DNA of 62,808 nucleotides, the filler included, from Sluysia triapertura (taxonomy: Eukaryota): NCBI GenBank assembly GCA_046118255.1. It is 5 parts of 5 records of this genome, joined end to end, with 100 filler letters (N's around TTAATTAATTAA, not from the genome) between each part and the next. Parts side by side here need not be neighbours in the genome. Positions count along the whole stretch, not along the records: positions 51,153 to 62,808 come from JBJNIA010182369.1; 4 more parts are not named here. The stretch is one strand, 5' to 3'. Of the stretch, positions 51,153 through 62,808 are shown in pieces. The notes under the pieces were generated by a model. It was not told where the DNA came from. It ran no database searches and saw only the letters and a program-made list of their open reading frames with translations. The translations under genes were made by a program, and so were the position numbers. Numbering within the stretch: the first letter of the stretch is position 1; each line of letters opens with the position of its first letter.

Positions 51153-52900
51153 AGATCTAGAAACTGTGACCGAAGAGAATAGACGTCTTAAAACAATAGT
51201 TAAAGAATTATTAATCAAACTTAAACGACAGAAAATTAATAATGAAGCAAATCGTGAAGAAACCGATGAAGGAATGTTAGGTAATTTATTATTCACAAAG
51301 GATGTTGGTAGACACACTAAAGAAAATGTTGTTTTTGATAGTAATGCTAGTAATAAAGAATATATAAAAGATACTAAAAAGGACATTAGCAAATTTCAGG
51401 AAATAAAAACTGAATTAAGAATGATCAGTAATAAAAATAAAGAAGATGGAAATCAGAACCTGTATTAACTGAAAAATGTGATATTAAGTTACAGAAAAGA
51501 TTAATAAATACATTGTGCCTTGGTGACATAGTAAATAAGCAACACCCTTCTTTTGAAAAAGAAATAATATAAGAAAAGTCTACAAAATGTGGTAGAAGTT
51601 GTTTTGTGAAAAATAGTATTTCATTATTAAAATATATTTTACCATTAATAACTATTTTAATAGTTCTTGGAGAAAATCACCAAAAATTTAGACTTAGAGA
51701 TGCTCATAGTAAAGTTTGTTCAACTTCAACAATAGTCATATTTATGCTTTCTTATTTATTCGAATTTACAACTTCGAACTCTTTTTTTGCGAAACCTACA
51801 ATAATAAATTAACAAATTTCACTTGGGACAATGAGAAGTACAACTGCATGTGGTCCTGAAAACAGGTCGACTATAGTGGATCTTAACAAAAATCCACACA
51901 TTGAAACAAATACAATTAAAAGACGGCCTGGTCGCCCAAGAAAAAAATGAAGAAAATGATATGCATCTATTTATCTTGCATATTGAGCACAAACTATTTG
52001 TCGAGAAATACTTCACCTAAAATAATTTTGATATCTACCCAGAAAGACATTTACTCTAAAATATTAATAGATAAAATTAAGTTATTTTCTGTTCAAATAA
52101 AATGTTGTATAATGGATTAATGTGAAATTGAAATACGGGCAAGTAAACAAGATTTCTACTGGTTTACATCTTGCATTGATCTTGCTGAATATCAATTAAT
52201 TAGTGTAACAATAACTATAGAACTGGAATATGATTCCCAAAGTGACTCAAAGACTATTTTGATGCGGTATTATAAAATAAAGACTAAACCGTTTACTTTT
52301 CAACAATCATTAACACATGATAGCAAGACTGAATCCCAACAATCGTTGACATCAATTGAATATCTACCGTTATCTGGGAAATATTGTGCGTATCCATAAT
52401 CCATTATGTGGTAATACATTAATAATCGCATATGAATTGCCTGTTGGGTTACGTTATGGAATAATATTACCTGATGATTCTATTCGCTTGTATCGTATAC
52501 CAAATAATAAACTCGTGTTTATTAAATTTTGGATATTAAGAAAACCAGAAATACATGATTCAAAAGGATTTTGGCCAATTGTAGATAAGTACCAAAATGA
52601 TTTCGATACGAAATCAGAGAAAATGATTAGAATTAATAACAATTTTACGAATGTACCTTATGATAGGAACAGAAATATAGGTTCGAATACTACCAGCATA
52701 AGTATGAATATCAGTAAGGAGAATAACGAATGTTCAATTATAAAAGAATCCAACAACAACTTCTTCATAACTTTAAATTATATTTTAATAATAATTTCCT
52801 TACTAACATTAATAATTAATTTTATTATTTATTTATTAGGCACAGAGGCCACTTTCTCATATAAGTTGTAATATATTGCATTGATGACCACATGTAATGG
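51153..52900 (+). mobile_element. heavily deleted, divergent relative of the Gypsy family (copy C)
   Basis: IVDLNKNPHIETNTIKRRPGRPRKNEEND at ~51865 matches the AT-hook ORF of copies A/B; ORF 52356 ends ISMN...NFFI+TM like ORF 57667. Confidence 0.65.
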
Positions 52901-55734
52901 TCATTCATCTTGGGTCATGTGTGATATTAAAATCATAAAAAATTAATTTTAATTTTGTAAAGATAGTAAGGATCATGCATATGACTATTTGTAATGGTTT
53001 ACCATTCATTTCGAGTCATACGCAAACTAAAATATCACTTAACTTTTATTTAGGATTAGGATTTTTTAATTTTTTATATTTTTAATTTACAATAGTACTC
53101 ATTTTATAACCGTATTTCAAAAACGGTGTTCCTTAAATCTTTTTATCTTTTCTCTATGAAATTTTACCTGGATTTTGCGACCGGAATAAAATCGGCGACT
53201 TTATGTTAATTAATGAATGAAATCAAGTAAGAAATAAAAATATATTAGTTATACAATTATACAAAATGATTTTATATAGGAGATAATAAAGGTTATATAA
53301 TAAATGTATAAATAATTTAATAAAGATTATAAATATAATCTTTTATTAATTAATTACCTCCCTCTTAAAAAGTGGGTTGTTAAAAAATTTTACAATCTAT
53401 TAAAATTGAGGAAAACTTATGAAAAACAAACTAACGGTTACAACAAATGGATTATAGATAAAATTTCCAAAAAATTAAATATCGTCCAAAATTCGAATGA
53501 ACTTCAAATAAAAGTTCAAATTAATCGCCGAAGAAAATTGATAAAATTTCAGAAGTTCCTTGAAGATCGTGGTACAAAATCTTTTGATTATTATGTTGTG
53601 TGTTTTTTGTTAAATGTTATGTGCCTTTTATAGTAAATGAGTGATAACTTTGACTGATATTTATTTGAAGAGTTAATTTGTTTTAAAGAATTTAAGAAAT
53701 TAAAAATATAACGATTTTAAATAAATAATAATAATAACAAGAATACCAACAAACTATTAAAATTAAAATCAATAATTTTATTTTAAACTATTAGAATTAC
53801 AATAAAAATTTTATTTTTAGATTTTACAATCAATTTTTAGATTCTACTTAGTAAAAATCAATAATTTATATTTACAGACCTATTTTAGATTAAATAGGTA
53901 AACTATTATAAATTTTAGTTAGATTCTATATTTACACCTATACATAAACTATTTTTAGATTATAAATATAAACTTTAGATATTGACATAACTTTCCCTTA
54001 CGGAAAAATTAGTCTCTAATTTTAAAATAGTGTGGTATTATTATTATTAGTCAAATTCAGAATCACTGTCTAATAAAGTGATCACCGGAATATCATCACC
54101 ACATCCAAAAAATTCGTTTTCAGTTAAATTTTTACCCAGAACACCATATTCATCATTGTCACTGTTATCACTATCGTCTAGATCGACTGGCGAATCCAGT
54201 TTTCTTTTCTTGATAACTGTATCTGACGCCGGATGTTTCGATGTTACCATTTCTGTTTTTGCCGGTTCTCGGTCTTCTGTTATCTTTTCATCTTGTAATT
54301 GTGGATCTTCCTTATAAAATTTCTTGTTATTTAAATTTTTTGATGTTACTTTTATGACTTTTGTGAGGAGGTGTAAAAGGAATAGGCCTATCAAAGTATG
54401 GAAGTTTTGTGCAGATTATGGCTTTGTTAGAAGATGTAGATGGAATGAGAGAAAGATGTGAAGGAGAAAAGGGTGAATGAGAAGAAAAAGAAGGCAAAAT
54501 TGGAATAGAAGTAATTTTTGAATTGTCGATCTATGGCAGAAAGAATCTGTTCTTATTTTGTATCAAGTCAAATAATGATATTAAATCCTTAGCGTGCTCT
54601 AAACATGAAACACGCGGTGGGAAGAGATTTAACAATTTCAAAACCTTCCGCGCCCTTAAGATTGGATTAAATGACTTGTGCGAAACTAAATTTGTACATG
54701 TGAGATTAATGATTCCCCTTAATCAGCCGTATTGAATTTTAAATGTATTAATAATTATGTCGGGGAAGAATGCGACTAATATTTTATCGTATTGTGATGT
54801 AAGCCAATGTTGGCGGATGTCAGCTGTCTTTCGCATTGATAAGGTTGTCTTCCCTTAACCAAAGTTCTGCCGCTAGAAAGTTCCTAATTCTTATACGTGG
54901 TCTTAGTAATTCATCCGAATGGAAAAGTTTGTGATATTGTATTAAACAAACTCTTATTGGCTGGTAATTTTCCTTAAAATCTAGTGCCAACTGTACTGTT
55001 ACGAAGACAAGTTTATTTTTGTCTAACATGGATATATGTGGGGTATGAGTAAATGTTATTCTTTCTTCTCACTTATAAAGATTATCTTTGTCCTCGGCGT
55101 ATAATAAAGGGTGTTTAGTCATATCTAGAGGTTTATCAATGTTCAAAAAGAAAACAGCGAAGGTGGTAGACAGTTCTTCCGCTTCAATGTATACTTTGAA
55201 ATTTGATGTCAGATTTGTTATCACTAAGGAAGAATAGCCTTGTATTCGTGAATGTAGAGGGACTTTGTTCACGAATAATGATATTTTGAGGGAACCCCTA
55301 GCTGCGGCAATAAGCACCTACTGTCATCTTTAAGGTATCCCTGCAAGGTATTTATAATTAAAGGAGATTGTATTTATTGTATATGAAATAAATGTGTGAT
55401 AAAATTTTGGTCCAATTCATTCTTTAAAATGTTTGTTGTTAGGTTTGATTTTAAAAATACATAAGGGGTATCATATTTGCCACAAAAGCTATCTATTCCA
55501 TTGTAAAAAGAGGGAATATTGTTTGTGATGTATGCATGTGGAAGAGTGGTTGGAGATATCTGAATGAAAGAACATGTTTTGTAAAAAAGTAAATACAAAG
55601 TTAGATATTTTAATCGTTAGTTTGTTTAGTTTGTTATTAATATTACATTTATTTGATTATTAATTAACCTATAAATTTTAGGAATCATAAAAAGAAAATA
55701 AATAAAAATGAAAATAAAATATTAAGTACGTTTC

Positions 55735-56193
55735 TTTTTGAAGAACGGATTATTTTTAATTCTTAAATTGCTTTTATATGATCCCATCTTTTTATAGAAT
55801 CATCTCAATTGTCTCCTGCGACGGTTGTGTTTTTGTGAACGTGTCAGTCCAGGAGGAAAATTTGGTTTAAGTATACTTATTTCCTGTTTATTGTTAAATT
55901 GCTTATAATAGGTGGGTTGAATAATTTCTATATCTTCTATTTGAATATTTTCTGTATTACTATTTAGTGAAATATCTTAAAGTGCATATGAATGGCGGAA
56001 TTTTACCTTACGAAATACCTGTATTTCCTTTACTATTGTTCTACATAATGAACAATTCAAATACTTAGTTAAAGTAAAATGAAAAAGATTTATGATGCAT
56101 TTAAAATGGAATTTACGCATGCATGGAAATGTTTTTACATAATGTTTTTTTATGAATTGACTTTTGACAAATTGAACATTTGATGCAATACAT
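55735..56193 (-). pseudogene. RING-H2-type zinc finger ORF
   Basis: CSICQKSIHKK/HYVKTFPCMRKFHFKCIINLFHFTLTKYLNCSLCR across a 1-nt frameshift in an A7 run. Confidence 0.75.
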
Positions 56194-56459
56194 TATCTAA
56201 AATATGAATGAAAAATTAAAAAATAAAAATATACTTAGTAAATAAAATTTATTATTATATTAAATAATAAATTATTATTATATTAATTAAATAAAGTTTA
56301 TGTTCCTATTTAATGTACAAAGCTAAGTAAAACTGCGAAAAGACCATTAATAATTTTAAGTTAGGTGACCGGTCAGACAGAAGGTAACCGTCAATATCGA
56401 TCACTCGTAACTTATTCATTTTTTATTCATTTCTATACTTTGATTGAACAAGTTAATCT

Positions 56460-58400
56460 ACGCGTGTTAATTACATAAATTTTTATGATTTCTGTCGTAA
56501 GAGTGACTGCAAGTAACGCAAAAAGTATGAATGTTATAAGACATAAATATATGTTGATTTTATTTGAATTGGCTTGTCGCTATTGCTGATTATTTTTTAT
56601 TTATTGATTTTACCATTTCATACTTATTATACTTATTTAATGTCTTCAGTAGTTTCATTAATGATTGGTACTACTAAATTAAATTGTCGTCCAGGCCAAA
56701 TGCGGTTCATTCTAAATGTTTCATTAATGAAAAATATCAATATGTATATAAATGGGAATGTCAATTTTGCTTGGTAATCTATTCTAATTGTTAACTTAGC
56801 TGGTATTAACTCTAAAGAGGCTTTATTGGTACGATAATTTATGGCAATTGAATTATTTAATAACGTGTTGGTCATTTTAACTGAGTTATTTCTGTCAATT
56901 ATTGCTGTAAAGGAGCAATTCAACCATTGTCTACTAAAATAGTCAAAAAATAAATATGGTTTGGTTTTAATCCAATGATACTGTGTATATATTAATCTAT
57001 TTATTAGCGCTATTGTTATCTTAACTTTATATAATTGAGATTCGAATAATTCTTCACAATTTATGATCCACTTTTTGATTGTTTTATAAGGAATTGTAGT
57101 ACATTGATCTTGTAGACAGCATCATATAGATAAGTGAATTAATTTTCCATTTATATTTTTAACAATAGCTATAATTTCATCGGTCTTAACTTGAATAGAT
57201 AATTGCATATCATTATGAAACATTTTCTTATTTAATTTATTTGTTATAATCTTAGTCGAATAAACGGTGGTTATACACGTCAAACAAATACATAGTAAAA
57301 CTGATGACATTTGAATTCCATTGTAATGTGTCTGAAATCTTAAATCATATTCATATAATGGAGATGGCATTATTGGTGGTAATGGTGGTCCTTGAGGGGC
57401 ATAAAATCGATTGATTATTGGTACTGAATAATGATTATCCTCGTCGTTATTAGATGAAAAATTTGAATATCTGCACTTATTCATTATAAAAAACATGATC
57501 ATTAAGAATGTTATAATTAAAGCAATAATAAATAAGGTTGCTGCTATTATTAGAATTACCAATGATGGATCCTTTCTTAATGAGTCGATAATTGTTAATT
57601 CTTTTCTGTTACCTTGTATAGCATAATGTAGTTGTTTAATTATTTTGGTTTGCTTTATAAATATTACTATGTGTCTATCTTCCGAAAGCAAAAAATCCTT
57701 ACAAATTGTAACGGGATATTGCGTATTTTAGGTATTACATGTTGATGGGTTTTCCATATACTAAAATTGAATCTTGAGGGATTAATACATATATATTGTG
57801 CTTTTATATTCGTACTGGTCATTTTAATTTGTACTTCAGTATCATAGTTGTAAAAATCGAAATATTGTGATCTATATACCTTTTGTGATCCATTTACTAT
57901 TGATACCAATGATAATATAGTGAGTAACATTATGTCTCGACGAATATTATTAGTTCTTAAAATTCTGTTACAAATAATAATATAAATACTAAATAGCAAG
58001 TATATTATGGTAAAAATTAGAAGTGCCAATATAAAGAAATTCTTTGTACTATCTTTTTTCTTTTCCCTTATTGTATTTGTACTTACTTCTTTATCATTCA
58101 TACTTATTTCTTTATTTGTTGATCTTTCCAGATTTCTTGTTATTGGTGTTAATGCTATTGAAGTTTCCTTGTATTATTGTTCATTAAGTATGTCCGTAAA
58201 ATTTATTGTTACCAATTTACTGTCATAAAATGAAAATCCGATTAATGTAGTAAAATAAATTGAATGTTCACATTGATAGATATCATATATTAACAAAGGT
58301 TTCTTTATTACTAATGGTTTCAAATAGATACAATAAATTTCTAAATTATAATTGGGTATTGGGTTTCTATCGTCTACCTCAACTGTCCAAAATCGATTTA
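56460..58400 (-). pseudogene. tandem type-I membrane glycoprotein polyprotein
   Basis: TM, internal signal MLLTILSLVSIVNG, TM with Tyr/Pro tail, internal signal MSSVLLCICLTCITTVYS, N-glycosylation sequons (NCS, NNS, NET), terminal TM. Confidence 0.55.
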
Positions 58401-58537
58401 AAATATTTTAAGAAAGATTGCTTGTTTAGTATTAGTATAACTTGTTAAGTTTGCTGGATAATTAGGTACCATGGTTGTGTATTGCCGTCATCGTTATCTG
58501 TTCCTTTACCCGATGTTGAAGAGACTGTGGTATCCAA

Positions 58538-59160
58538 CTAATCAAGATTTTCCCAATTTGGAGTTGGCGATGGTGTTATGATTGGATTTAATGCAGTAAT
58601 TTGATAATTTTGTGGTAAAGGTTGTAGTGCTCTTGGCATTGGAGGTAAAACTAATTGTGGTAATACTTCATGTGTTCCTAAAGGTATTTTAAGTAATCCT
58701 AATCTTCCACGAATTACTATGTTTTCTAGTTTATTTATTACATCCATTCCTAATATAATATCATATGGGCATCTTTCCCAAGCTAATATTTTTACAAACA
58801 GGTCTACATCTAAGATTGTTAATTGACATTGTAATATTCCATTAAATAAAATATTTGAACCATCCACTTCAAATAATCGTTTTCCGGCTTGTTGTAACAT
58901 AGTAATTTCTAAAGCAGTTAGTATATTGTAATTGATAATAGTGTTATTTGAACCCGTATTTATAACTGCTCGTATCCATCGTTGATTGAATTTAATACTT
59001 TGAAACAGGTGATTTTGTATATTAAAAGAGGTTATCATATTTATTGCACTTATTGGTTTATTGATCATTAAATCCGTACTTGTTGGTTTAGACGGTGTAC
59101 TTAATAATTTAGATGGTTTATTTCTATCTTTAATCCTTGACTTTACTGTTAATATACTTT
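58538..59160 (-). CDS. retropepsin-like aspartic protease located 3' of integrase (catalytic D to N)
   Basis: IRAVINTGSNNTII...YDIILGMDVI match the A-L-I-DTGS and DIILGMD retropepsin motifs. Confidence 0.85.
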
Positions 59161-59670
59161 TCGTACTTTCCTATTTCTTAAGTTATTTTCGTCATTAGGT
59201 GCTAATTTACATCGATTTACGTGTATGACGAAAGTCTCTGCATTCATATCATTAGGTTTCTTTATATATATAAATTAGTAGAAGTTGTTTTCATTATTTC
59301 ATATGGTCCCTTAAACGGTTTATGCAATTTCGGAGAATATCCTGGTTTTGATATTGGGTAATCTACTAGTACTTTATCTCCTACTTTAAAATTATGATCA
59401 TTTGTTTTTTTATCATAGTTATCTTTATAAGTTTCCTGTGTATAACGTATCTGTAACCCAGCGCGTTTCCACGCATCTTGTAAATTTTCTCTCATAATAG
59501 TTACATATTCAGGAGTTTCTAGATATTGAGATGACGGTGGAATCCAGTCTAAATCTACTGGCATATTTGAGTGTCTACCGTACATTAGATAAAATGGTGT
59601 AAAATTAGTAGCAGGATGTACTGAACTTCTGTAAGCAAATAAACATGGAGCGATATAAAGATCCCAATAC
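59160..59670 (-). pseudogene. pol: Gypsy integrase C-terminal part with GPY/F module
   Basis: WDLYIAPCLFAYRSSVHPATNFTPFYLMYGR...FKVGDKVLV...FKGPYEI...VIHVNRCK. Confidence 0.92.
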
Positions 59671-60465
59671 AAATGGCATCTTTTCACATTCATATAATTC
59701 ATTTCCACATGAAAAAGCTGTCTTATGCTTGTCCTTTTCTGCAATTTCTATTTGCCAATAGCCGCTTTGAAGATTTAAAGTCGGAAAATATTTTGCTTTT
59801 CCTAATTTATCTAACATTTCATTGATTCTTGGTAACGGAAATACATCTTTTCTTGTTATCTTATTTAGTTCTCTAAAATCAATACAAAATCTCATAGTTC
59901 CATCTTTTTTCTTGACTAATAATACTGGTGATGAGAGTGGAGAAAAGCTTGGTCTAATTACTCCAGCCTTTTTCATTGTGTCTATTTGATCTTTCATTTC
60001 TTGTTGATTGCATAATGGAATTCTATAAGGTTTCTTTCTTATTACTTTATCTTCTATTAATGGGATTTCGTGTTTTATTATAACGGAATCTCCAATATCA
60101 TATTTATTTCTTGCTATTGCCCAAAGATATCTGTAGATGACTTTGTATAACGTTTCTTTTTGTTGTTTAGTTAAATTCTTATTTTTTATTTGTATTTCTT
60201 CATAATCTTCTTCATCTTCAATATCTCTTTGAAGTTTTATATTCTTATCCTTTGGTTTATCATTTGATACCATATTTATTTGTGTTTGTAATTTATAATT
60301 AACTATTTCTCCCAACTTTGTTCCTGCGTATAATCATTTATTTTCATCAGTATAATTTATTATTCTTGTACATTTCCATCTTGAATTCTGCAAATTGAGT
60401 CAGCAATACCTATGTTTAATTTTTTGATTATTTTTTGAAGCGATAAACATTATTGGACCATTTCT
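59671..60465 (-). pseudogene. pol: Gypsy pre-RT linker and RT N-terminus
   Basis: KKPYRIP...GVIRPSFSPLSSPVLLVKKKDGTMRFCIDFRELN...FPLPRI...SGYWQI...KTAF...MPF. Confidence 0.95.
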
Positions 60466-60489
60466 CAGTTTGTCTCCTTTATTTAGGCT

Positions 60490-60826
60490 TTTGTATCCAA
60501 TTTCGAAAGCATTTCTACAATTATTTGGTAATATTTTAAATGGTTTCTGTACGTATGAAATATCAATAATTGAAGAATACCATATAACCACTGACCTTTT
60601 AACCAAACATTCCCTGACCAAAGTTGTGACCAAATTCCCGTCTTGGTATACATTGAATACTTTCATATCTTTTATTTTGACTCTATTTGGTCTTGATTCC
60701 AGACAATCTTCAGTGTCTAATAGAGAAAATTTTCTTCCAATTTGAGGTTGGCTACAATAAAAAAGCCTTAATAGCATTAGTCTTATGAATTCCAAATAAT
60801 GCCAATAAAACAATTATAAATAACAT
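60490..60826 (-). pseudogene. chuvirus-type glycoprotein N-terminal fragment, copy B
   Basis: CSQPQIGRKFSLLDTEDC...VYQ...VRECLVKRSVVIWY-SSII...ILPNNCRNAFEIG. Confidence 0.65.
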
Positions 60827-62808
60827 TATTTATTGAAGTTCCAAATTGTGAGAATGATCCATTTGAATTTTCTTTATTATTAATTAGTCTAGATATCATA
60901 TTAAGTGGTTCATTTAAAGTATTCTTTTCTTCTTTTTCTTTGTCTTTGATAATATTTTTCCATCCTCCTAGTTTATTTATCAGAGTACTTAATTTCTTAT
61001 CAACAAAGTTTATGATTTTATCTATCTTTTCTTTAGTTAAAAGTGTAGCTTTATTACATTGAAATATTACATAAGCCATTATTATTTTAAGTCTTTCCTT
61101 ACTTATTCCTGCGTTAATCTGTTTATTTATTATAGTTTTATACTGCCCATTATCTATATAATCGCTTATATCTGTATTTTTATACTTTTCCATTATTTTG
61201 ATTATCTTATTTAATGAACTCTTGTATTCTTTTAATTCTGGTAACAAAGTTAGAAAACTTATTTGACAATAATGTATAAATTATAGTTTTAGTACTTAAA
61301 GTCTCATCAATATTTTTATAAGCAATTTTTGTTAAATCAATGGGTCTTCTATGTATTGGGTTTGAAATTATTGTTTCATCATCGTTATCTTTAACTTTTT
61401 TAGGTCTACCTGGCCTTCTTTTGAAAGTATTTGTTTTTTAATCTTCCGTTTCTATATGCGAGTTTTTATTTAAATCGATTATTTAATCAGGTTTTTCTTC
61501 AATGTCATCTTCATTATCATTAGTAATATCTATTATTTTACTATCGTTATAATTATCTTTATTTTCTTTATAATTATCATCCATTAATTCTCTTAGTAAT
61601 GAACGTGGGGTTCTGTCTAAATCAACATTATTATCATCATTTATTAATTCATCTAATTTTCTTAAATCATCGCAAGGTTTAGTGTATGCCATTATAACTG
61701 CGGAAGTCATTGATGCTTCCTTACGGTTTCCATTCATTGATGGATAACCGTAATCATTTATATAATCATTAGGTAATAATTTTCTATCATAAAATATAAA
61801 TCAACATCAGTAATATCAGAGTCATTTGATTTAAGTAATTCTATAATATCTTTTGCAATTGAAGTAACTGGGAGTTCCATAGTAATATTCAAAACATTAT
61901 TAATAATTATACCTATTTTCATTAATTCTTTGTGGTTATCTTTTTTTCATTTTTGCCCTATTTTTCTTAGTAATTTTCTTGCTTTAGTCTTATATGAACT
62001 ATCTTCTTTACTTAAAATAGCTAATACTAATTTAATCTCATGTCCATTTTGTAAGCTCAATTCTGAATTCAATAAGTCATTCAAATTTTCATTTAAATCC
62101 TTACCATGAGTCATATTGGATAAAAATTCTTCGATTTTTTGATCAATTCCTGGGGTATCTATTTTATCATTTGTAGCTGTTATTATTGATTCCATTTCTT
62201 CTGTTTCCATCTTTTCTGTGACACTGTTATAAGTATCTTCTTCCTCTATGTCAATTTTTTCTGCTTGTATTTCTTCATCATCAGTTTCTTTATTATTAAT
62301 AATATTTTCTGTCTGTTTCGACTTCTTTGTCATCACTAAATTCATTATTTGATTGTTTTTCTTCTTGATTTAATTCTTCTTCAGTTGAACTCGATTCTAT
62401 ATTCGATTCTTCATCTGTTGGAATTGATTCTATATTAGATTCCTCTTCTGTTTCATCATTACTTTCTTTTGATTCAAAATCTGCTAACTTGTTTGATTCT
62501 GTTTTCTTTGTCTTTCCTTCCCATTTGTCAATTAATTCTTGAATTATTTTTCTTTTAACTTCATTTGATATCACTTCCTTTATATCCTTTATTTGTTCGA
62601 TGCTTTCTCCTAAAGGTTGATCTAATAATTCCCGAATTCTCACCTGGATTGGTTGAATTGTTCATCTGTTTTCTTCTTTTTCTCGTTGTTCCTTTCTCTG
62701 TTTGTCTTTCTGAAATTCCAAATATCTGTCGTGCATATAACTCATAAAGATTTCTTCTTCTTGTTTATTCTTAAATCTATTTTTATCGCAGTCCAGTCCA
62801 GTGATATA

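What the first reader, a model, noticed from the sequence alone, without database searches (positions are those of the whole stretch)
54047..62808. Large retrovirus-like Gypsy family with rearranged domain order and many accessory genes
Seen, combining copies A and B: gag(knuckle) - Glu-rich ORF - AT-hook ORF - glycoprotein N-terminus - RT - IN - protease - membrane polyprotein - RING - ~500-codon unknown ORF. That is more than 9 kb even with most of RT, RNase H and the IN core deleted. Known: the canonical Ty3/Gypsy order is gag-PR-RT-RH-IN(-env); giant multi-ORF Gypsy elements such as planarian Burro exist. Inference: an intact master would be a complex, possibly infectious, invertebrate retrovirus-like element with an architecture I do not recognise.
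Basis: partly seen in the sequence, partly recalled or inferred. Interest (0 to 1): 0.9.

Follow-up and report, generated by a model that had tools for sequence, protein, structure and literature searches.

The report
Decayed env-carrying Gypsy element, extra protease
This is a dead, internally deleted copy of an envelope-carrying Gypsy-type endogenous retrovirus of an AT-rich invertebrate; its odd gene order comes mostly from deletions and a published env-before-pol layout, and the one unusual feature is an extra protease-like domain after integrase.

Summary
Window 54050-62808, minus strand, is former coding DNA: 1934 residues lie in open stretches of at least 100 codons, against a mean of 7 in shuffles. 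The core is a Ty3/Gypsy element. It holds the N-terminal ~16% of a Monjiviricetes-type fusion glycoprotein, then the N-terminal half of RT, then the C-terminal part of integrase, then a full-length retropepsin-like domain.

Intact relatives from metagenome contigs (P0055, 2855 aa; P0073, 2627 aa) read (gag knuckle)-acidic linker-env-PR-RT-RNase H-IN-long tail in one ORF. This is the published GAG-ENV-POL/Burro-type layout.

The window copy has lost most of env, the usual protease(s), half of RT, RNase H and the integrase core. That loss is why it appears to read RT-IN-PR.

The protease-like domain after integrase is real. P0055 has one at the same place, in addition to two proteases before RT.

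The 3' blocks have no detectable homologue: membrane-like ORFs, a sub-threshold RING-H2 and a 1.6 kb ORF. Their link to the element is untested. I did not fetch other copies or relatives' DNA, because of the bar on fetching animal viruses.

Verdict: a new family and a modest variant of a known kind. Interest is moderate to low.

The parts
54050..62808 (-). Whole minus-strand block of former coding sequence: the element plus 3' blocks whose membership is unproven. The 5' end is cut by the piece's edge.
   Evidence: ORF density. AT skew changes sign near 54.1 kb. ORF lists.
60814..62808 (-). Acidic Glu/Asp/Lys-rich region upstream of env, equivalent in position to the knuckle-to-env linker of P0073. 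It carries an 11-aa acidic tandem repeat and one AT-hook-like motif. Interrupted by 4 frame changes and 4 in-frame stops.
   Evidence: Composition. Tandem repeat. GRPK motif. Counts. P0073 layout. No Pfam hit.
60403..60813 (-). N-terminal fragment (signal-like start plus about 105 residues) of a Monjiviricetes-type fusion glycoprotein (env). The remaining ~84% is absent.
   Evidence: 36% identity to P0055 aa 154-249, inside its PF24664 domain (E 1.6e-84). Env profile E 1.3e-19, positions 24-129 of 679.
58541..60366 (-). Remnant of pol as one broken gene: RT N-half, IN C-terminal part and a post-IN PR-like domain. Missing: pre-RT protease(s), RT C-half, RNase H, IN zinc finger and most of the IN core. 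Two large deletions, 2 frame changes and 2 in-frame stops.
   Evidence: Colinear tblastn with P0055, P0073, P0069, P0046 and P0067. Counts.
59632..60366 (-). Pre-RT linker plus the N-terminal half of the reverse transcriptase domain.
   Evidence: Pfam RVT_1 positions 1-119 of 205, E 1.7e-10. Ty3 RT/Gag-Pol 1.5e-32 and 7.5e-32. P0055 aa 1314-1543.
59203..59723 (-). C-terminal part of integrase: end of the core plus the C-terminal domain.
   Evidence: 49% identity to P0055 aa 2097-2247 and 52% to P0069. Weak SH3_Tf2-1 hit.
58682..59005 (-). Full-length retropepsin-like domain placed after integrase. Its catalytic motif is not canonical in this copy.
   Evidence: Five Pfam PR families, best E 3.6e-5 and below cut-off. 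hhalign 98.7% and profile E 4.9e-22. Colinear with P0055 aa 2306-2411. Motif check. NJ grouping.
56636..58407 (-). ORF block with three TM-like stretches, signal-peptide-like starts and a Cys/N-glycosylation-rich stretch: small membrane glycoprotein-like products. No homologue found.
   Evidence: Hydropathy and motif counts. No Pfam, PDB-level or protein hits. AF2 model failed.
55803..56196 (-). RING-H2-like zinc finger, incomplete within one reading frame.
   Evidence: zf-RING_2 E 3.3e-4 (21.3 bits against a cut-off of 27.3), profile positions 9-44 of 44. Translations.
54050..55656 (-). ~530-codon unknown ORF block, 29-37% GC and bounded by 17% GC on both sides, ending in an acidic/Ser-rich tail. 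Broken by several frame changes and stops.
   Evidence: Composition. ORFs. No Pfam hit. Counts for the whole 3' region.
51153..54049 (.). Flank. It has plus-strand ORFs, an AT-rich (17% GC) tract with tandem repeats, and nothing recognisable as an LTR.

Best explanation
The block is a decayed, internally deleted insertion of a Ty3/Gypsy (Metaviridae) endogenous retrovirus of the GAG-ENV-POL type.

Inferred from uninterrupted relatives, the intact form of this lineage is one long reading frame. It runs: gag end with a CCHC knuckle, an acidic linker, a Monjiviricetes-type fusion glycoprotein with its own signal and anchor, one or two retropepsins, RT, RNase H, integrase, and then a long lineage-specific tail with membrane-spanning stretches. 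In one branch the tail starts with a further retropepsin domain.

Shown here:
- This copy keeps only the env N-terminus, the RT N-half, the integrase C-terminal part and the post-integrase retropepsin-like domain.
- Every region is interrupted by frame changes and stops, so the copy can encode no enzyme.

Inferred:
- The apparent RT-IN-PR order results from loss of the upstream protease(s) together with retention of the extra downstream one.
- The membrane-like ORFs directly downstream are the equivalent of the relatives' membrane-anchored pol tail.
- The RING-H2-like and 1.6 kb ORFs are either accessory genes of the element or a neighbouring pseudogene. I put this at roughly even odds.
For: - RT fragment: Pfam RVT_1 1.7e-10; best solved relatives are Ty3 RT and Gag-Pol at 1.5e-32 and 7.5e-32.
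- Colinear matches of the window to P0055: env N-terminus (aa 154-249), RT (1314-1543), IN C-terminus (2097-2267), post-IN PR (2306-2411).
- P0055 by Pfam: PF24664 fusion glycoprotein aa 133-813 (1.6e-84), PR at 848-940 and 1136-1229, RVT_1, RNase H, Integrase_H2C2 and rve.
- P0073 has the same order, with a CCHC knuckle at aa 31 and about 340 acidic residues before env.
- Env profile hit in the window: E 1.3e-19, covering only positions 24-129 of 679. No other env or PR remnant appears in any frame.
- PR-like domain: hhalign 98.7%. It groups with P0055's post-IN PR in an NJ tree.
- All PR domains of the relatives carry the canonical catalytic motif. The window's does not.
- The five closest relatives by IN C-terminus (40-52% identity) all have tails of 356-608 aa after IN, each with TM-like stretches.
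- Interruption counts: 4+4, 2+2 and 8+19 frame changes plus stops in the three regions.
- Published precedent: GAG-ENV-POL elements (PMC13524379); env in frame between gag and pol in Burro (PMC6431247); a large lineage-specific ORF after IN in Cer1 (PMC10309623).
Against: - No LTR, PBS, PPT or target-site duplication could be identified. The 5' end is cut off and no long direct repeat exists in the piece.
- The gag knuckle is not in this piece.
- Only one of the five close relatives has a PR after IN.
- The relatives' tails do not align with each other or with the window's 3' ORFs beyond the first 30-110 residues.
- GC skew on the coding strand changes sign between the pol region and the 3' blocks.
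- The 3' region has many more in-frame stops than the rest. This fits separate ORFs with spacers, or foreign DNA.
Confidence: 0.72

Rival explanations
1. One reading: the family's master copy truly has the order env-RT-IN-PR, with the only protease moved behind integrase. That would be a rearranged pol.
For: In the window the only PR-like domain in any frame lies after IN. A PR after IN also exists in P0055.
Against: P0055, P0073, P0069 and P0071 all carry PR before RT. P0055 has its post-IN PR in addition to two upstream ones. The window lacks the equivalent of about 800-1065 residues exactly where env, the upstream PR(s) and the start of pol lie in relatives.
Confidence: 0.1
2. The 3' blocks are not part of the element: at least the RING-H2-like segment and the 1.6 kb ORF (54050-56196), and possibly the membrane-like ORFs too. 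They would be a neighbouring host pseudogene or another decayed repeat lying on the same strand by chance.
For: No homology to any of the 270 retrieved relatives or their tails. No RING in close relatives; the one RING found is in a merged pseudoscorpion gene model. The 54.0-55.6 kb block is compositionally discrete. GC skew differs from the pol region. There are stop-rich AT-rich spacers between blocks.
Against: Same strand and contiguous with the pol tail. The density of interruptions in the 1.6 kb block is similar to that of the 5' acidic region. Relatives have long, fast-evolving, TM-bearing tails after IN. Accessory ORFs and RING-type motifs are described in planarian giant Gypsy elements (PMC6431247). 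No LTR lies between pol and these blocks.
Confidence: 0.4
3. The IN-PR junction is a one-off: a nest of unrelated insertions or a misassembly.
For: Two large internal deletions and many frame changes show that the copy is heavily rearranged.
Against: The same adjacency, with similar spacing, occurs in the uninterrupted 2855-aa ORF of P0055. That protein comes from an unrelated metagenome contig and is only 30-49% identical. The rest of P0055's tail shows no repeat of pol, which speaks against a chimeric join.
Confidence: 0.05

Closest known systems
GAG-ENV-POL Ty3/gypsy 'errantiviruses' of Nematoda, Bryozoa and Platyhelminthes (Chary and Hayashi, eLife 2026, PMC13524379)
   Same: Gypsy-type pol with a viral fusion glycoprotein gene placed upstream of pol rather than downstream. 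The hosts are invertebrates and many copies are degraded.
   Different: Those elements are described with separate ORFs and gB-type env. Here the relatives carry env and pol in one ORF, env is Pfam PF24664 (Monjiviricetes type; I did not determine its fusion class), protease number varies from one to three, and one protease lies after IN. No direct sequence comparison was made, because I did not fetch comparators.
Burro / GYPSM1 giant Gypsy elements of planarians (Grohme et al. 2018; Arkhipova and Yushenova 2019, PMC6431247)
   Same: Gag with CCHC knuckles, env in frame between gag and pol, env resembling mononegavirus fusion glycoproteins, extra domains including RING-type motifs, and an AT-rich host genome.
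   Different: None of Burro's marker domains (BIR, MATH/TRAF, BCL2-like, ankyrin, dUTPase) was found here or in P0055, P0073 or P0069. The relatives' ORFs are 2600-2900 aa, not about 4900. The host is unknown. In Burro the extra domains lie before PR, not after IN.
Cer1 of Caenorhabditis and its CERV ORF (PMC10309623)
   Same: A Gypsy element with a large, lineage-specific reading frame after integrase that has no homologues outside the genus.
   Different: CERV is a nuclear RNA-export factor with no TM segment. Here the tails carry TM-like stretches and, in one branch, a retropepsin domain. This is an analogy only; no homology was tested or seen.
Chuvirus-like glycoproteins captured by mosquito BEL/Pao and Gypsy elements (Dezordi et al. 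2020, PMC7642597; PMC13524379)
   Same: An LTR retroelement has captured a glycoprotein of the Monjiviricetes type.
   Different: Those cases are in arthropods and mainly on BEL/Pao backbones. I did not compare the position of env relative to pol.

Membership tests
Ty3/Gypsy (Metaviridae) LTR retroelements | RT of the Ty3/Gypsy type | tested here: met
   Best solved relatives are Ty3 RT at 1.5e-32 and Ty3 Gag-Pol at 7.5e-32; caulimovirus and spumavirus RTs score far weaker. There are 84,756 hits in the representative library, and the named ones are Gypsy-type pols.
Ty3/Gypsy (Metaviridae) LTR retroelements | pol order PR-RT-RNase H-IN | tested here: inconclusive
   Met in the intact relatives P0055, P0073, P0069, P0046 and P0067. 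In the window only the RT N-half followed by the IN C-terminus survives. That order is compatible, but the upstream PR and RNase H are absent.
Ty3/Gypsy (Metaviridae) LTR retroelements | Long terminal repeats, tRNA primer-binding site, polypurine tract, target-site duplication | not testable with these tools
   The 5' end lies beyond the piece's edge. No direct repeat of 30 nt or more is compatible with an LTR. No tRNA-like or Rfam feature was found. Purine runs give no convincing PPT.
GAG-ENV-POL env-carrying Gypsy elements | A viral fusion glycoprotein gene lying 5' of pol on the same strand | tested here: met
   The env N-terminal fragment at 60403-60813 lies immediately 5' of the RT fragment. 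Full-length env lies 5' of PR-RT in P0055 and P0073.
GAG-ENV-POL env-carrying Gypsy elements | gag with CCHC knuckle upstream of env | not testable with these tools
   No gag knuckle occurs upstream of env in the piece; the one CCHC-pattern match (near 56.2 kb) lies in the RING-like region, and the element is cut at 62808. Relative P0073 has a knuckle at aa 31, about 340 residues before env.
GAG-ENV-POL env-carrying Gypsy elements | Intact open reading frames (as used to define 'intact errantiviruses') | tested here: not met
   14 frame changes and 25 in-frame stops between successive open segments, plus two large deletions.
Burro (giant planarian Gypsy) | Marker domains BIR, MATH/TRAF, BCL2-like, ankyrin and dUTPase inside a giant ORF1 | tested here: not met
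   None was found by Pfam in the window segments or in P0055, P0073 or P0069. Only a sub-threshold RING-H2 was found.
Burro (giant planarian Gypsy) | Sequence relatedness to Burro pol/env; dugesiid planarian host | not tested
   I did not fetch a Burro sequence because of the bar on fetching animal virus comparators. The host is unknown; the best RT relative is 60% identical and unnamed.
Retropepsin (family A2-like) domain | Retropepsin fold-length domain with the catalytic Asp-Thr/Ser-Gly motif | tested here: inconclusive
   Domain homology is met: hhalign 98.7%, profile positions 6-103 of 105. The canonical motif is absent in the window copy but present in all eight relatives' domains, including P0055's post-IN one.
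RING-H2 E3 ligase domain | Complete C3H2C3 zinc-binding pattern reaching Pfam's threshold | tested here: not met
   zf-RING_2 scores 21.3 bits against a cut-off of 27.3 and matches only profile positions 9-44. The pattern is not complete within one reading frame.

The most novel reading that the evidence does not exclude
A lineage of env-before-pol Gypsy endogenous retroviruses has turned the end of pol into an accessory region. It would hold a relocatable third retropepsin module after integrase, a membrane-anchored tail, and downstream accessory genes: small membrane glycoproteins, a TM-linked RING-H2 ligase-like gene and a ~530-codon acidic-tailed protein. That would make it a 'complex' invertebrate retrovirus with captured host-type genes.
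Probability: 0.2. Interest if true: 0.65.

Novelty: new variant of a known kind. Interest (0 to 1): 0.35.

Why it matters
The copy itself is dead and is an ordinary decayed repeat. Its value is as a pointer.

- Together with two uninterrupted relatives from metagenome contigs, it shows a little-sampled clade of env-before-pol Gypsy elements.
- In that clade, protease copy number varies from one to three, and one protease module sits after integrase ahead of a membrane-anchored tail.
- I found no description of a post-integrase protease in the held literature.
- If the downstream ORFs prove to be linked, the clade would add a case of accessory-gene accumulation in invertebrate retrovirus-like elements. 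This bears on how retroviruses gained complexity.
- For annotation, it warns that apparent 'rearranged' domain orders in single copies can be deletion artefacts.

Tried and rejected
- Word-indexed protein searches with the PR-like segment and with the 201-aa membrane-like segment found nothing.
- The same search with the RT segment found no relative closer than 60% and no host name.
- tblastn, phmmer and profile searches of all 150 retrieved polyproteins and of the five relatives' post-IN tails against the 3' ORFs gave only noise.
- Two single-sequence AlphaFold models (56636-57121 and the PR-like domain) came out at pLDDT 32-33. They were discarded and no fold search was run.
- No LTR-like direct repeat, tRNA or Rfam family was found. 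A purine-run scan gave no convincing PPT.
- A RING in relative P0022 was rejected as evidence, because that protein is a merged gene model with two RTs and a LINE endonuclease.
- The CCHC pattern near 56.2 kb was considered as a second gag knuckle. I rejected this in favour of the first half of the RING-like finger.
- A weak env-profile touch in the plus-strand flank (E 0.018 in a tiny database) was judged not significant.
- Troyka elements were checked in the literature and are not relevant.

Left out on purpose:
- Look-ups or pattern scans that would fetch the DNA of relatives or other copies.
- Fetching Burro, Cer1 or errantivirus comparators.
- Any consensus, joined-frame or read-through sequence. 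A read-through with X at same-frame stops would have needed typed letters, so it was not done.


Full report
**1. Is the observation there?**

Yes, on the minus strand.
- From 54050 to the piece's edge at 62808, open stretches of at least 100 codons sum to 1934 residues. The plus strand gives 214, and 200 shuffles give a mean of 7.3 and a maximum of 225.
- The DNA is 23-35% G+C. AT skew changes sign near 54.1 kb, which marks the 3' limit of the block.
- The flank 51153-54049 codes, if at all, on the plus strand.

**2. What the core is**

- Segment 59608-60333 matches Pfam RVT_1 positions 1-119 of 205 (E 1.7e-10). Among solved structures it best matches Ty3 RT and Ty3 Gag-Pol (1.5e-32 and 7.5e-32).
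- An exhaustive HMMER search of 1.84 billion representatives with this segment gave 84,756 hits. The best are 40-50% identical.
- Many top hits are pseudoscorpion (Cordylochernes scorpioides) gene models with two to four RT stretches, that is, merged repeat copies.
- The informative relatives are single ORFs from metagenome contigs. P0055 is 2855 aa, from an ENA contig of 15,970 bp. P0073 is 2627 aa and is filed under a Flavobacteriaceae MAG, evidently a mis-binned eukaryotic contig. The others are P0069, P0046, P0067 and P0071.

**3. Architecture of the relatives**

- P0055 by Pfam: viral fusion glycoprotein PF24664 at aa 133-813 (E 1.6e-84); aspartic protease at 848-940 and again at 1136-1229; RVT_1; RNase H; Integrase_H2C2; rve.
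- P0073 has the same order with a single protease. It has a CCHC knuckle at aa 31, followed by about 340 acidic and lysine-rich residues before env.
- The layout is published. GAG-ENV-POL Gypsy elements occur in nematodes, bryozoans and flatworms (PMC13524379). In planarian Burro, env lies in frame between gag and pol and resembles mononegavirus fusion glycoproteins (PMC6431247).

**4. The window copy against that template**

tblastn of P0055 on the piece gives colinear matches:

| P0055 residues | Region | Window coordinates |
|---|---|---|
| 154-249 | env N-terminus | 60762-60493 |
| 1314-1543 | RT | 60366-59632 |
| 2097-2267 | IN C-terminus | 59723-59203 |
| 2306-2411 | post-IN PR | 59005-58682 |

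- A profile of the three relatives' env domains hits only 60403-60813 (E 1.3e-19), at profile positions 24-129 of 679. No other env remnant exists in any frame.
- The copy therefore lacks about 84% of env, the pre-RT protease(s), the RT C-half, RNase H, and the integrase zinc finger and most of its core. The losses amount to two large deletions.
- Between successive open segments I count 4 frame changes and 4 in-frame stops upstream of env, 2 and 2 in the env-to-PR stretch, and 8 and 19 downstream.
- In the stop-rich AT-rich spacers of the 3' region, some 'stops' may simply be intergenic sequence.
- The copy cannot encode any enzyme.

**5. The protease after integrase**

- The segment matches five Pfam protease families below their cut-offs (best 3.6e-5).
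- Against a profile of 14 protease domains from the relatives, it scores hhalign probability 98.7% (E 4e-16) and covers profile positions 6-103 of 105. It is the only protease-like sequence in the piece.
- P0055 has a protease-like domain at the same place after integrase, with similar spacing, in addition to its two upstream ones. That domain carries the canonical catalytic motif, as do all the relatives' protease domains. The window's does not.
- The rest of P0055's tail resembles no other part of pol. This speaks against an assembly chimera.
- In a neighbour-joining tree of these very divergent domains, without support values, the window's domain groups with P0055's post-IN domain and with the first of P0069's two pre-RT proteases. 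This suggests a protease module that has changed position within the clade.
- The IN-to-PR adjacency is therefore real and ancestral to at least two distant families. The absence of a protease before RT is a deletion.
- I found no description of a post-integrase protease in the held literature with the terms tried.

**6. The tails**

- The five relatives closest by integrase C-terminus (40-52% identity; all others 38% or less) all continue for 356-608 residues after integrase.
- Each tail has one or two TM-like hydrophobic stretches.
- The tails align with each other only over the first 30-110 residues.
- In the window, the PR-like domain is followed by ORFs with three TM-like stretches, signal-peptide-like starts and a Cys- and N-glycosylation-rich stretch (56636-58407).
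- I read this block as the counterpart of those tails. That is an inference from position and character, not from homology.

**7. The remaining 3' blocks**

- The RING-like segment matches zf-RING_2 at E 3.3e-4, below threshold, and covers only profile positions 9-44. The zinc-binding pattern is not complete in one frame.
- The block 54050-55656 is a compositionally discrete stretch of about 1.6 kb, at 29-37% G+C against 17% on both sides. It is open in pieces of 48-122 codons and ends in an acidic, serine-rich tail.
- Neither block has a Pfam family or any match among the 270 proteins retrieved.
- For linkage to the element: same strand; contiguity; no intervening LTR; a density of interruptions in the 1.6 kb block similar to that of the 5' acidic region; and published precedent for accessory ORFs and RING-type motifs in giant planarian Gypsy elements, and for a large post-IN ORF in Cer1.
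- Against linkage: a different GC skew; stop-rich spacers; and no RING in close relatives.
- I put linkage at about even odds.

**8. What could not be established**

- LTRs, PBS, PPT and target-site duplication could not be found. The 5' end is cut off, there are no long direct repeats and no convincing purine tract.
- The gag knuckle lies outside the piece.
- The host organism is unknown. The closest RT fragment is 60% identical and unnamed.
- I did not determine the fusion class of the PF24664 glycoprotein.
- Two single-sequence structure models failed, at pLDDT 32-33.

**9. Verdict**

- This is a Gypsy-type, env-carrying, retrovirus-like family, and uninterrupted relatives exist in nature.
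- The unfamiliar order is explained by a published env-before-pol layout plus two deletions in a dead copy.
- The new element of architecture is the extra protease module after integrase, ahead of a membrane-anchored tail. It is shared with one distant intact relative.
- The family has no close relative in the protein collections searched.

I rate it a new variant of a known kind, with interest 0.35. The most novel reading not excluded is a complex element with linked membrane, RING and unknown accessory genes. I give that reading a probability of about 0.2.

Noticed in passing
window 52356-52871 (+) and 51166-51468 (+): The flank carries plus-strand ORFs. One of 171 aa has N-glycosylation sites and a C-terminal TM-like stretch. 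One of 100 aa is charged and coiled-coil-like. Neither has a Pfam hit. Each could be a host exon or another decayed repeat.
   Followed up: partly
window 53600-54000: A tract of 17% G+C with tandem repeats (34-nt unit at 53751-53817, 17-nt unit at 53681-53721) lies directly beyond the last minus-strand ORF. It could be the insertion boundary or part of a terminal repeat.
   Followed up: no
window 62373-62452: A 33-nt tandem repeat (2.4 copies, 82% matches) lies inside the Glu-rich ORF, giving an 11-residue acidic peptide repeat.
   Followed up: no
window 54050-54415 (-): The last ORF segment ends with a basic patch, followed by an acidic/serine tract around a short hydrophobic core. By eye this looks like a nuclear-localisation signal plus a SUMO-interaction-type motif. 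No tool result supports it.
   Followed up: no
P0073 (NCBI HBK71150.1): A 2627-aa gag-env-pol polyprotein of a eukaryotic Gypsy element is filed as a hypothetical protein of a Flavobacteriaceae MAG. This looks like a mis-binned eukaryotic contig in a public bacterial bin.
   Followed up: partly
P0001-P0023 and others (Cordylochernes scorpioides): Many annotated pseudoscorpion 'proteins' of 2000-3500 aa contain two to four RT stretches, and one also a LINE endonuclease and a RING. These are gene models that merge neighbouring repeat copies, and they inflate bit scores in searches.
   Followed up: partly
P0055, P0069, P0073 protease domains: Protease copy number differs among close relatives: one in P0073, two in P0069, three in P0055. 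The domains fall into three paralogue groups in a rough NJ tree. One group is found before RT in P0069 and after IN in P0055 and the window.
   Followed up: partly
window 58052-58069 (-): An 18-nt purine run lies inside the first membrane-like ORF. If it were a polypurine tract, the post-IN tail would be about 400 codons, within the relatives' range. However, the following bases do not start like a typical LTR, and long ORFs continue beyond it.
   Followed up: partly
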